Below, one piece after another: positions 41,334 to 41,807 of a DNA stretch of 64,000 nucleotides. A program made the position numbers and the translations under genes. The number at the start of each line of letters is the position of its first letter. Within the stretch, counting starts at the first letter, position 1. The DNA is taken from the NCBI RefSeq assembly GCF_001194135.2, contig NC_068998.1, forward strand, positions 42,732,278-42,796,277, read 5' to 3'. Source of the stretch: Octopus bimaculoides. Taxonomy: Eukaryota. A model generated the notes under the pieces. That model was not told the DNA's origin. It worked only from the letters and a program-made list of their open reading frames with translations, and searched no databases.

Positions 41334-41807
41334 AAATATAAGGACACAGGAAATGTGTCAAGGCCAACAGGAAGTGGTCCAGCTTCTTAGGGCTAAATAG
41401 CAGCAGTATGATTCCCTTTACAGGTCTGTCACATTAATTTGACAGTAAACAACTGCTTTATCGTAACACTGCTGCTTATATCTCTTTGTGAGATTTATAA
41501 TTAGATCATTTCTAATTTTGTAACCAGTGAATGTGTTTTCACTGAAAATATATATATTTTTGAAGGCTAGATATGCTTTTTCAGACAGCTGGTCGGCTAC
41601 CTCAGGCTGATGAGGAGCAATGACTCAGAAACATGTCCCTGAATGCAGACTAGGCTGGGTGGGGAGGCTTGTCTCCCCTTCACAAATATAAGGATACAGG
41701 AAATGTGTCAATGCCAACAGGAAGTTGTCCAGCTTCCTAGGGCTAAATAGCAGCAGTATGATTCCCTTAATGGGTCTGTCACATTAAGTTGACAGTATAC
41801 AACTGCT
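41334..41807 (+). mobile_element. Retrozyme/Penelope-pLTR-like element: 124-bp direct repeats 350 bp apart enclosing a hammerhead
   Basis: 41334-41457 is repeated at 41684-41807. Confidence 0.75.
41602..41642 (+). ncRNA. Minimal type I hammerhead ribozyme (predicted cleavage after GUC at 41637)
   Basis: UCAGG / CUGAUGA / G-GAG-CAAUGA-CUC-A / GAA / ACAUGU / C / CCUGA. Confidence 0.8.

What the first reader, a model, noticed from the sequence alone, without database searches (positions are those of the whole stretch)
41334..41807. Retrozyme-like element: intact minimal hammerhead inside a 350-bp-period partial tandem repeat
Seen in sequence: 41602-41642 folds as a type I hammerhead with stem I UCAGG/CCUGA, core CUGAUGA, stem II GAG/CUC, GAAA, palindromic stem III ACAUGU and a GUC triplet. 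It is followed by a GGGGAG/CUCCCC hairpin and flanked by 124-bp direct repeats 350 bp apart, each with two hairpins (gacac/gtgtc, ctgtca/tgacag). Established knowledge: Penelope-like pseudo-LTRs and metazoan non-LTR retrozymes carry minimal type I hammerheads with palindromic stem III that act as dimers, in monomers of a few hundred nt that can give circular RNAs. Inference: this is a non-coding ribozyme retroelement family that may not be catalogued in cephalopods. Two more divergent copies lie within 7 kb, and all three covary in stems I and III.
Basis: partly seen in the sequence, partly recalled or inferred. Interest (0 to 1): 0.85.

Follow-up and report, generated by a model that had tools for sequence, protein, structure and literature searches.

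The report
Hammerhead ribozyme retroelement copies, Penelope-type
The hammerhead self-cleaving RNA motif is really there, and it belongs to four old, non-coding, roughly 350-base retroelement copies of the known kind linked to Penelope-like retrotransposons, so it is a genuine but fairly ordinary find.

Summary
Positions 41602-41642 carry a complete type I hammerhead: full core, cut site C41637/C41638, palindromic stem III ACAUGU. A GC hairpin follows at 41661-41678. The 128-bp direct repeats 41334-41461 and 41684-41811 are 92% identical and 350 bp apart.

The two further copies exist (40140-40189 and 47913-47957). I found a fourth on the minus strand (39365-39406) with the U3-A8 core covariation already described for Penelope-like element (PLE) hammerheads. 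Four hits compare with 0.065 expected by chance.

All four share the order extended helix I, ribozyme, GC hairpin, structured repeat module. Helices I, II and III and the repeat-module hairpins show compensatory changes.

The insertions look PLE-type: partial tandems, one head-to-head inverted repeat copy, and ends in (TA)n microsatellites. I found no coding capacity and no reverse transcriptase signature in the window.

Each locus has a single ribozyme. None can release a unit-length or circular RNA on its own, so these are solo or partial copies, not tandem retrozyme arrays.

Best reading: a non-autonomous, PLE-dependent hammerhead retroelement family, a new member of a known kind. Rfam misses it. 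The host organism and the Dfam/Repbase status could not be checked.

The parts
41334..41461 (+). Element e1, 5' direct repeat (DR module)
   Evidence: 128 nt, 92% identical to 41684-41811, spacing 350 (D18). Matches the DR profile at E = 2e-31. Preceded by TA-rich sequence at 41320-41333.
41462..41560 (+). Element e1, unique spacer X
   Evidence: No similarity to the other copies. No open reading frame. Part of a 350-nt unit that folds far better than shuffles, z = -5.4.
41561..41601 (+). Element e1, 5' strand of the extended helix I
   Evidence: The RNAalifold consensus of e1, e3 and e4 extends helix I beyond the 6-bp stem, with compensatory pairs. Homology with e3 starts here.
41602..41642 (+). 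Element e1, type I hammerhead; cut between C41637 and C41638
   Evidence: Sequence read. Descriptor hit. Sub-threshold Rfam HH9 match, 21.1 bits. The predicted dimer with an intermolecular stem III is 12.8 kcal/mol more stable than two monomers.
41661..41678 (+). Element e1, GC hairpin GGGGAG/CUCCCC
   Evidence: The same hairpin sits at the same place in all four copies, with an A:U to G:C change at its base.
41684..41811 (+). Element e1, 3' direct repeat; the element ends near 41805 at (TA)n(TG)n
   Evidence: D18.
39748..39871 (-). Element e2, head-to-head inverted solo copy of its repeat module
   Evidence: nhmmer E = 2e-12. Inverted repeats I1 and I12, 83% and 74% complementary.
39886..39993 (+). 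Element e2, 5' direct repeat
   Evidence: 108 nt, 80% identical to 40234-40341, spacing 348 (D19; D2).
40140..40189 (+). Element e2, type I hammerhead with a stable 4-bp stem III; cut at A40183/U40184
   Evidence: Parts: GGGUCA, CUGAUGA, AGGUU..AAUCU, GAA, AUCA-AUGC-UGAU, A, UGACUC.
40209..40226 (+). Element e2, GC hairpin AGGGA/UCCCU
40234..40345 (+). Element e2, 3' direct repeat; ends at a (TA)n tract
47880..47912 (+). Element e3, 5' strand of the extended helix I; the element starts right after (TA)n
47913..47957 (+). Element e3, type I hammerhead with the 8-nt palindrome AUCGCGAU; cut at A47951/C47952
   Evidence: The predicted lowest-energy dimer is the symmetric double hammerhead.
47976..47993 (+). 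Element e3, GC hairpin AGGGA/UCCCU
48001..48213 (+). Element e3, two tandem copies of the repeat module (period 100, 88% identical)
   Evidence: (Tandem Repeats Finder, 48008-48208), D20.
39365..39406 (-). Element e4, type I hammerhead with the U3-A8 core variant (UUGAUAA) and palindrome ACUAGU; cut at C39371/U39370
   Evidence: U3-A8 is the covariation reported for PLE hammerheads in PMC4209133. The predicted lowest-energy dimer is the double hammerhead.
39329..39351 (-). Element e4, GC hairpin AGGGGA/UCCCCU
39201..39323 (-). Element e4, repeat module; the whole element spans about 39200-39580 between two (TA)n tracts
   Evidence: DR profile E = 4.5e-28.

Best explanation
These are four old insertions of a short (about 350 nt), non-coding, hammerhead-bearing retroelement. 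It is the kind that depends on Penelope-like elements (PLEs) for mobility. In published terms they are solo or partial copies of a non-LTR retrozyme, or equivalently a miniature PLE made only of pseudo-LTR sequence.

Shown by sequence and computation:
- Each copy has the order extended helix I, hammerhead, GC hairpin, structured repeat module.
- The catalytic core is intact in all four.
- In three copies stem III is a perfect palindrome, which cannot hold a monomer together but gives a 6-8 bp intermolecular helix in a dimer.
- The insertions are partial tandems, one with an inverted copy, and they end in (TA)n tracts.

Inferred mechanism:
1. The element is transcribed, either by read-through or from a promoter in the repeat module.
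2. Two ribozyme copies, on one multimeric transcript or on two RNAs, pair through stem III into a double hammerhead. Each RNA is cut after position 17, which for this copy is C41637.
3. In tandem master copies, this releases unit-length RNA of about 350 nt that a tRNA ligase could circularise.
4. A PLE reverse transcriptase/GIY-YIG endonuclease supplied in trans nicks AT-rich DNA. It starts reverse transcription inside the RNA at the end of the repeat module, about 156-171 nt 3' of the cut site.
5. The resulting copy is longer than one unit, which creates the terminal direct repeats.

The locus in the finding carries one ribozyme. At most it is cut once, and it cannot give a circle.
For: Motif reality: 4 hits against 0.065 expected, and 3 palindromic stem IIIs against 0.

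Covariation among the four copies:
- Every one of the six stem I positions changes with compensation: GGACU/GUGUCU/ACUGGG/ACAUCU against their partners.
- Stem II changes with compensation.
- The C3-G8 to U3-A8 core change in e4 is documented for PLE hammerheads (PMC4209133).
- 11 of 33 consensus pairs around the ribozyme show two-sided changes.
- 6 of 24 pairs in the repeat module show two-sided changes.

Homology: e1 against e3 gives E = 1e-13 to 5e-15, and e3 finds e4 at E = 2.4e-08. A joint profile recovers all three at E < 1e-59.

Dimer design: the symmetric double hammerhead is the predicted minimum-energy dimer for e3 and e4. Dimers beat two monomers in all four copies.

PLE-type insertion signatures, as listed in PMC8557442:
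- Partial tandems of 350 and 348 bp in two mutually unalignable subfamilies.
- A head-to-head inverted copy.
- 6 of 8 element ends within 25 nt of (TA)>=4, against 13.5% of the window.
- The ribozyme lies a fixed 156-171 nt from the 3' end. This parallels the internal reverse-transcription start about 90 nt 3' of the ribozyme cut and the AT-rich target described in PMC11167929.

Non-autonomy: the unit has no reading frame. Ten nearby ORFs give no Pfam hit. Only one stop-riddled Y.DD motif occurs in six frames of the whole window.

Comparable elements: unit size and low GC match mollusc retrozymes of 350-390 bp (PMC7229834). The 350-nt unit is strongly structured, z = -5.4.
Against: - No cleavage or expression data exist.
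- e1 and e3 have a purine.A mismatch at 10.1-11.1, where G-C is strongly conserved in PLE hammerheads (PMC4209133). That could weaken catalysis.
- In e1 a competing hairpin (CCUCA/UGAGG) sequesters part of the core in the predicted folds.
- No PLE reverse transcriptase is in the window, so the link to PLEs rests on insertion architecture and ribozyme type only.
- No tandem master copy with two or more ribozymes was seen.
- With only four copies (three lineages for most pairs), the covariation counts are small.
- Repeat divergence of 8-20% says the copies are old and probably inert.
- PLE hammerhead cleavage was not needed for insertion in vitro (PMC11167929), so the role of the ribozyme in mobility is itself unsettled.
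Confidence: 0.72

Rival explanations
1. The copies are randomly 5'-truncated remnants of full-length autonomous Penelope-like elements, that is, fragments of their pseudo-LTRs, and not a dedicated short non-autonomous family.
For: Most minimal hammerheads in animal genomes occur as single motifs thought to be truncated PLEs (PMC4209133). PLE hammerheads lie in the pseudo-LTR near the unit junction (PMC8557442, PMC11167929). e3 is clearly 5'-truncated, starting 72 nt upstream of its cut site. The insertion signatures are the same as for autonomous PLEs.
Against: Two subfamilies too diverged to align outside the ribozyme (e1 and e2) have the same period (350 and 348 bp) and the same architecture. 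Random truncation of a 3-kb element would not reproduce this. All extra repeat copies start at the same point, 47-57 nt 3' of the cut. No RT-like sequence adjoins any copy.
Confidence: 0.18
2. The locus is an active non-LTR retrozyme that yields a circular RNA of about 350 nt with ends at 41637/41638.
For: The unit size, low GC, strong predicted self-pairing and type I ribozyme match published retrozymes (PMC7229834).
Against: Only one ribozyme lies in 1.37 units, and two cuts are needed to release a monomer. The published working definition of an active non-LTR retrozyme needs a ribozyme in every tandem unit (10.64898/2026.07.22.740005). The two repeats have diverged by 8%.
Confidence: 0.05
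3. The element is a SINE transcribed by RNA polymerase III that carries a hammerhead, like Schistosoma Sm-alpha, and is mobilised by a LINE rather than a PLE.
For: It is short, non-coding and dispersed. The window is full of another SINE-like repeat. Hammerhead-bearing SINE-like elements are known from my own knowledge of Sm-alpha.
Against: No tRNA-like sequence occurs anywhere in the window. There is no poly(A) or LINE-type tail apart from a short A run after e3. The partial tandem and inverted-copy structures are PLE hallmarks (PMC8557442).
Confidence: 0.04
4. The hammerhead-like motif is a chance match in AT-rich repetitive DNA.
For: No Rfam hit reaches the gathering score. Two weaker motifs in the window (38805-38839 and 23883-23939) may well be chance, given 0.28 expected under the relaxed descriptor.
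Against: Four strict hits against 0.065 expected. All four lie in homologous or architecturally identical elements, with compensatory changes in every helix.
Confidence: 0.01

Closest known systems
Minimal and atypical type I hammerheads of Penelope-like elements (Cervera & de la Pena 2014, PMC4209133; Lunse et al. 2017, from my own knowledge and cited in PMC10085705)
   Same: Type I topology. Stem III is very short or absent as a monomer, with a palindromic sequence suited to dimers. The U3-A8 core covariation is present (e4). Sequence variability between copies is high, with compensatory changes. Occurrence is mostly as single motifs. Insertion structures are PLE-like.
   Different: Here the ribozyme has a 5-6 bp helix I extended by a further long helix, closer to canonical metazoan hammerheads than to the barest minimal motif. 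e1 and e3 have a purine.A mismatch instead of the conserved G10.1-C11.1 pair. No RT/EN reading frame lies between the repeats. The ribozyme lies just outside the repeated segment, not inside it.
Metazoan non-LTR retrozymes (Cervera & de la Pena 2020, PMC7229834; Li et al. 2026 preprint, 10.64898/2026.07.22.740005)
   Same: Non-coding unit of about 350 nt (mussel units are 350-390 bp). Low GC. Type I hammerhead. Strongly self-paired predicted RNA. Presumed dependence on PLEs. Solo copies are a recognised category.
   Different: No locus in the window is a tandem array with a ribozyme per unit. The copies have a fixed architecture of repeat, spacer, ribozyme, hairpin, repeat. No expression or circular RNA evidence exists. 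Most invertebrate retrozyme hammerheads cleave well as monomers, whereas three of these four look dimer-dependent, like those of amphibians.
Full-length Penelope/Poseidon elements with pseudo-LTRs (PMC8557442, PMC11167929)
   Same: Partial tandem giving terminal direct repeats. An inverted truncated copy head-to-head with the upstream repeat. AT-rich or (TA)n targets. The ribozyme sits at a fixed short distance upstream of the 3' end of the insertion.
   Different: Units are 350 bp rather than about 3 kb, with no reading frame. The distance from cut site to 3' end is about 160-170 nt, against roughly 90 nt in the Anolis element.
Rfam hammerhead families (clan CL00010: Hammerhead_1, Hammerhead_3, HH9, HH10, Hammerhead_II)
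   Same: Same catalytic core and three-helix junction.
   Different: None of the four reaches any family's gathering score. Three give no match even at E <= 5 in scans of 141-901 nt. Rfam-based genome annotation would therefore not list them.

Membership tests
Hammerhead ribozyme (type I) | Conserved core: C3 U4 G5 A6 N7 G8 A9, G12 A13 A14, an A15.1-U16.1 pair, and position 17 not G | tested here: met
   All four copies comply. e4 has U3 and A8, a pairing-preserving double change known in PLE hammerheads (PMC4209133).
Hammerhead ribozyme (type I) | Three helices around the core, with helix I open-ended | tested here: met
   Helix I is 5-6 bp plus an extension. Helix II is 3-5 bp. Helix III is 4 bp intramolecular in e2 and 6-8 bp only as a dimer in e1, e3 and e4.
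Hammerhead ribozyme (type I) | G10.1-C11.1 closing pair of helix II | tested here: not met
   The pair is G.A in e1, A.A in e3, A-U in e2 and G-U in e4. The next pair inward is G-C in three copies and G-U in e4.
Hammerhead ribozyme (type I) | Score at or above the Rfam gathering threshold | tested here: not met
   No hit at gathering score. The best is HH9 at 21.1 bits against 52 for e1 only.
Hammerhead ribozyme (type I) | Site-specific self-cleavage | not testable with these tools
   Needs in vitro transcription of monomer and dimer constructs.
Metazoan non-LTR retrozyme | Tandem repeats of 150-450 bp with a type I hammerhead in each unit | tested here: not met
   Units are 350 and 348 bp, but only 1.3-1.4 units and one ribozyme per locus. 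They fit only the 'solo retrozyme' category of 10.64898/2026.07.22.740005.
Metazoan non-LTR retrozyme | No coding capacity, low GC, highly self-paired RNA | tested here: met
   No ORF in the unit. The window is 33% GC. MFE is -118.6 against -88.7 +/- 5.5 kcal/mol for shuffles, z = -5.4.
Metazoan non-LTR retrozyme | Expressed as linear and circular RNA of unit length | not testable with these tools
   No transcriptome is available. The organism was not identified.
Penelope-like element (autonomous) | ORF with a telomerase-like RT and a GIY-YIG endonuclease between the pseudo-LTRs | tested here: not met
   The spacer between the repeats is 222 bp with no ORF. Ten nearby ORFs give no Pfam hit. 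There is one stop-riddled Y.DD motif in the whole window.
Penelope-like element (insertion signature, applies also to non-autonomous derivatives) | Partial tandem forming pseudo-LTRs, inverted 5'-truncated copy next to the upstream repeat, microsatellite or AT-rich targets, and a hammerhead in the terminal region | tested here: met
   Partial tandems in e1 and e2 and a doubled module in e3. An inverted copy in e2. 6 of 8 ends lie at (TA)n. The ribozyme is 156-171 nt from the 3' end in all four copies.
Penelope-like element (insertion signature, applies also to non-autonomous derivatives) | Sequence homology of the element to the terminus of an annotated PLE (Repbase/Dfam) | not testable with these tools
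   No repeat library or host genome is on hand. Metagenome pattern scans gave nothing related.

The most novel reading that the evidence does not exclude
The fixed architecture could be a genomic footprint of ribozyme processing in PLE-type retrotransposition. Every extra repeat copy starts 47-57 nt 3' of the hammerhead cut, just past the GC hairpin. This holds for the e1 5' repeat, the e2 5' repeat, the e2 inverted copy and the second e3 module. Every element ends 156-171 nt 3' of the cut. One reading is that the template RNA has its 5' end made by hammerhead cleavage of a multimeric transcript. Its 3' limit would be set by internal initiation of reverse transcription, with the reverse transcriptase stopping at the terminal hairpin. 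That would make this a family with LTR-like terminal repeats generated by a ribozyme. It would also be natural evidence for a role of the hammerhead in the PLE life cycle, which is still unclear. A promoter at the start of the repeat module explains the same boundaries without the ribozyme.
Probability: 0.12. Interest if true: 0.6.

Novelty: new member of a known kind. Interest (0 to 1): 0.3.

Why it matters
This is a clean set of four diverged copies of a hammerhead-bearing, PLE-type non-autonomous retroelement, and standard Rfam annotation does not detect it. Ribozyme counts in such genomes are therefore probably underestimates; for example, 235 Hammerhead_1 hits were reported for the giant squid.

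If the window is cephalopod, it would add that class to the animals with retrozyme-like elements. It would also give a descriptor for a genome-wide census: core CUGAUGA or UUGAUAA, purine-GAG stem II, palindromic stem III, and a GGGA/UCCC hairpin about 20 nt downstream.

The constant position of the element ends relative to the cut site offers a small, testable handle on what PLE hammerheads are for. Beyond that, this is an expected class of repeat and these copies are old.

Tried and rejected
- **Rfam over the whole window at gathering score:** nothing. At E <= 10 over 17 kb, the listed matches (the best 150 of 197) were microsatellite-driven microRNA and other non-hammerhead hits; the rest, lower-scoring, were not shown.
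- **Covariance model of the ribozyme:** abandoned. MAFFT misplaced e4 by one column and misaligned the 3' half when given three sequences, and alignments cannot be edited by hand. I used an RNAmotif-style descriptor with shuffle controls instead.
- **BLASTN between the copies:** found only each copy's own repeats. nhmmer was needed to show that e1, e3 and e4 are homologous. e2 stays unalignable outside the ribozyme and hairpin.
- **Six-frame Pfam scan of 5 kb:** Ten stop-free ORFs gave no family, not even the visibly mariner-like one.
- **Organism identification:** the mariner-like ORF 41908-42288(-) found no homologue. I ran no further search on degenerate transposon fragments.
- **Metagenome scans:** two repeat-module patterns gave 0 hits and 12 hits. 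The 12 match only the pattern itself, at 11 bits, and are 38-59% GC contigs, so they are chance.
- **tRNA-derived SINE head:** ARAGORN found nothing in the window.
- **Weaker hammerhead-like motifs at 38805-38839(+) and 23883-23939(-):** each has a 4-bp stem I, no palindromic stem III, and no downstream GGGA hairpin or repeat module. I treat them as doubtful.
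Full report
**1. The observation**

The sequence at 41602-41642 reads UCAGG | CUGAUGA | G-GAG-CAAUGA-CUC-A | GAA | ACAUGU | C | CCUGA.
- This is a complete type I hammerhead. All invariant core positions are present.
- The stem III is palindromic.
Compared with the other copies, these occupy positions 10.1 and 11.1, so this copy has a G.A mismatch where hammerheads normally have G-C.
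- The GGGGAG/CUCCCC hairpin is at 41661-41678.
- The direct repeats are 41334-41461 and 41684-41811: 128 nt, 92% identical, 350 bp apart (D18).
- The hairpins GACAC/GUGUC and CUGUCA/UGACAG are in both repeats.

**2. More than chance**

I wrote a descriptor in the style used in the literature. It requires core CUGANGA or UUGANAA, stem II of at least 3 bp, GAAA, a stem III running from A to U, position 17 not G, and stem I of at least 5 bp.
- It finds four sites in the 64-kb window: 41602-41642(+), 40140-40189(+), 47913-47957(+) and 39365-39406(-).
- Two hundred dinucleotide-preserving shuffles give a mean of 0.065 sites and never more than two.
- Three of the four real sites have a perfectly palindromic stem III, against none in any shuffle.
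- Relaxing stem I to 4 bp adds 38805-38839(+) and 23883-23939(-), against 0.28 expected. These two lack every other feature of the family, and I regard them as doubtful.

Its core is UUGAUAA. This is the U3-A8 double change that keeps the C3-G8 pairing, and it was described as a natural variant in PLE hammerheads (PMC4209133).

**3. Rfam**
- No family reaches its gathering score anywhere in the window.
- In a 131-nt scan, the copy in the finding matches Hammerhead_HH9 at 21.1 bits (threshold 52, E = 0.0028).
- The other three copies give no hammerhead match even at E <= 5 in short scans.
- The motifs therefore satisfy the structural definition of a hammerhead but lie outside the curated models. 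The same is reported for the minimal PLE variants.

**4. Anatomy of the four elements**

I call them e1 (41334-41811, +), e2 (39748-40345, +), e3 (47880-48213, +) and e4 (about 39200-39580, -).

All four share the same order: a long 5' strand of an extended helix I, the ribozyme, the 3' strand of helix I, a GC hairpin, then a module of about 110-128 nt. The hairpin is GGGGAG/CUCCCC, AGGGA/UCCCU, AGGGA/UCCCU or AGGGGA/UCCCCU. It starts 13-19 nt after helix I.

How the module is arranged:
- In e1 and e2 it is also present upstream, giving direct repeats 350 and 348 bp apart (D18 and D19).
- In e3 it is doubled in tandem (period 100, D20).
- In e4 it is single.
- e2 also has a head-to-head inverted solo copy of the module at 39748-39871.

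Homology:
- e1, e3 and e4 are homologous over ribozyme, hairpin and module. nhmmer gives E = 1e-13 to 5e-15 for e1-e3 and 2.4e-08 for e3-e4. A joint profile recovers all three at E < 1e-59 and finds nothing else in the window.
- e2 aligns with them only at the ribozyme and hairpin, so it is a distant subfamily with the same design.

**5. Covariation**

| Helix | e1 | e3 | e2 | e4 |
|---|---|---|---|---|
| Stem I | UCAGG/CCUGA | UCUGUG/CACAGA | GGGUCA/UGACUC | UCUACA/UGUAGA |
| Stem II | G.A, G-C, A-U, G-C | A.A, G-C, A-U, G-C | A-U, G-C, G-U, U-A, U-A | G-U, G-U, G-C, G-C |
| Stem III | ACAUGU | AUCGCGAU | AUCA-AUGC-UGAU | ACUAGU |

- Every stem I position changes and stays paired.
- Stem III is a different perfect palindrome in e1, e3 and e4. 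In e2 it is an ordinary 4-bp hairpin.
- RNAalifold on e1, e3 and e4 predicts an extension of helix I beyond an internal loop, plus the GC hairpin. Two-sided changes occur at 11 of 33 pairs.
- On the five module copies it predicts four hairpins, with two-sided changes at 6 of 24 pairs.
- With three or four lineages the counts are small, but they are consistent in every helix.

**6. Folding**
- RNAcofold predicts the symmetric double hammerhead as the minimum-energy dimer for e3 and e4. In it, stem III is intermolecular and each helix I forms between the 5' strand of one RNA and the 3' strand of the other.
- Dimer energy against two monomers, in kcal/mol: e1 -40.0 vs -27.2, e3 -26.9 vs -18.0, e4 -32.0 vs -27.2, e2 -26.2 vs -21.0.
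- In e1 a competing hairpin (CCUCA with UGAGG) takes part of the core in the predicted structures.
- The 350-nt unit 41462-41811 folds at -118.6 kcal/mol against -88.7 +/- 5.5 for shuffles, z = -5.4. This agrees with the "highly self-paired" retrozyme RNAs of PMC7229834.

**7. Insertion signatures**
- Six of the eight element ends lie within 25 nt of a (TA)>=4 run, while 13.5% of the window does. A seventh, the e1 5' end, abuts TA-rich sequence.
- PMC8557442 lists the structural marks of PLE insertions. These are partial tandems forming pseudo-LTRs, an inverted 5'-truncated copy next to the upstream repeat, a short tail, microsatellite targets with (TA)n among them, and a hammerhead in the terminal region.
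- PMC11167929 shows that a purified PLE protein nicks AT-rich DNA. It starts reverse transcription inside the RNA, in a stem-loop roughly 90 nt 3' of the ribozyme cut.
- Here the 3' ends lie 168, 158, 156 and 171 nt 3' of the cut in e1, e2, e3 (first module) and e4.

**8. Coding capacity and neighbours**
- The unit has no reading frame.
- Ten nearby stop-free ORFs have no Pfam match.
- The only Y.DD motif in six frames of the window sits among stop codons.
- The neighbours are a mariner-like fragment (41905-42267, minus strand, by eye), microsatellites and a SINE-like repeat.

**9. What it is**

The best reading is a non-autonomous, hammerhead-bearing retroelement of about 350 nt that uses PLE machinery. 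In published vocabulary it is a solo or partial non-LTR retrozyme, or a miniature PLE made only of terminal sequence.
- I prefer this to random 5' truncation of full-length PLEs. e1 and e2 are too diverged to align, yet they share the period (350 and 348 bp) and the same boundaries.
- The locus is not an active retrozyme array.
- Repeat divergence (8% in e1, 12% in e3, about 17-20% in e2) says the copies are old.

**10. Mechanism, shown and inferred**
- Shown: the motif, its architecture, covariation, predicted dimer geometry and insertion context.
- Inferred: transcription, dimer-dependent self-cleavage after position 17, release and possible ligation of unit RNA from tandem masters, and PLE-mediated target-primed reverse transcription starting at the end of the module.

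A pattern worth noting: all four extra module copies begin 47-57 nt 3' of the cut, immediately after the hairpin. They are the e1 5' repeat, the e2 5' repeat, the e2 inverted copy and the second e3 module. Two explanations fit. The template could have a ribozyme-made 5' end, with reverse transcription stopping at the hairpin. Or a promoter could sit at the start of the module. I cannot separate them.

**11. Known or new**
- Minimal dimer-type hammerheads in PLEs and their massive spread in animal genomes are known (PMC4209133).
- So are non-LTR retrozymes, including a mollusc with 350-390 bp units (PMC7229834).
- So is their derivation from PLE pseudo-LTRs, along with the solo category (10.64898/2026.07.22.740005).
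- Penelope elements are abundant in cephalopods (PMC8967140, PMC13282606).
- A cephalopod genome paper lists 235 Rfam Hammerhead_1 hits (PMC6962438).
- I found no paper describing this family or retrozymes in cephalopods.
- I could not confirm that the window is cephalopod, nor search Dfam or Repbase.

Verdict: a real feature and a new member of a known kind. It is of modest interest, with a small chance of being informative about the role of PLE hammerheads.

Noticed in passing
Its core is UUGAUAA (the U3-A8 covariation) and its stem III is the palindrome ACUAGU. It lies between two (TA)n tracts, head-to-head with element e2 across the microsatellite at 39583-39741.
   Followed up: yes
window 38805-38839 (+) and 23883-23939 (-): Two weaker hammerhead-like motifs with a CUGAAGA core, a 4-bp stem I and a non-palindromic stem III. 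They lack the downstream hairpin and repeat module. Only 0.28 such hits are expected by chance, so they could be remnants of other PLE families or noise.
   Followed up: partly
window 38600-38725; also near 62876-62996, 42913-43032, 48613-48738, 55825-55939, 26014-26144, 45944-46078, 54870-54980, 7680-7798: An abundant SINE-like repeat of about 125 bp ending in a (GAT)n tail, with at least nine copies at 75-92% identity on both strands. No tRNA-like head was detected by ARAGORN.
   Followed up: no
window 41830-42420 (-) and 48440-49300 (+): Mariner-like transposon fragments flank e1 and e3. By eye, one has a transposase C-terminus (...YLLDIAHSDYHLF...) and the other an N-terminal helix-turn-helix-like ORF plus ...YSPDLAPANFHLF.... 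Neither gave a Pfam hit or a database homologue.
   Followed up: partly
window 35269-35752: A tandem array of a 32-bp unit (TCACCACACCCTGGCTCAGCATTCCTCAGTTA), about 15 copies, with a 96-bp higher-order period. It is unrelated to the hammerhead elements.
   Followed up: no
window 33000-50000, many sites (e.g. 44112-44182, 46070-46140): Dozens of sub-threshold Rfam matches to mir-297, mir-466, mir-3149 and similar families. All fall on (TG)n/(TA)n microsatellites, so they are composition artefacts and not microRNA genes.
   Followed up: yes
whole window: The window is 33% GC, contains 3896 N in many short gaps, and is extremely rich in (TA)n, (TG)n and (TC)n microsatellites. All four hammerhead elements cluster within 9 kb (39.2-48.2 kb), and the rest of the window has none.
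   Followed up: partly
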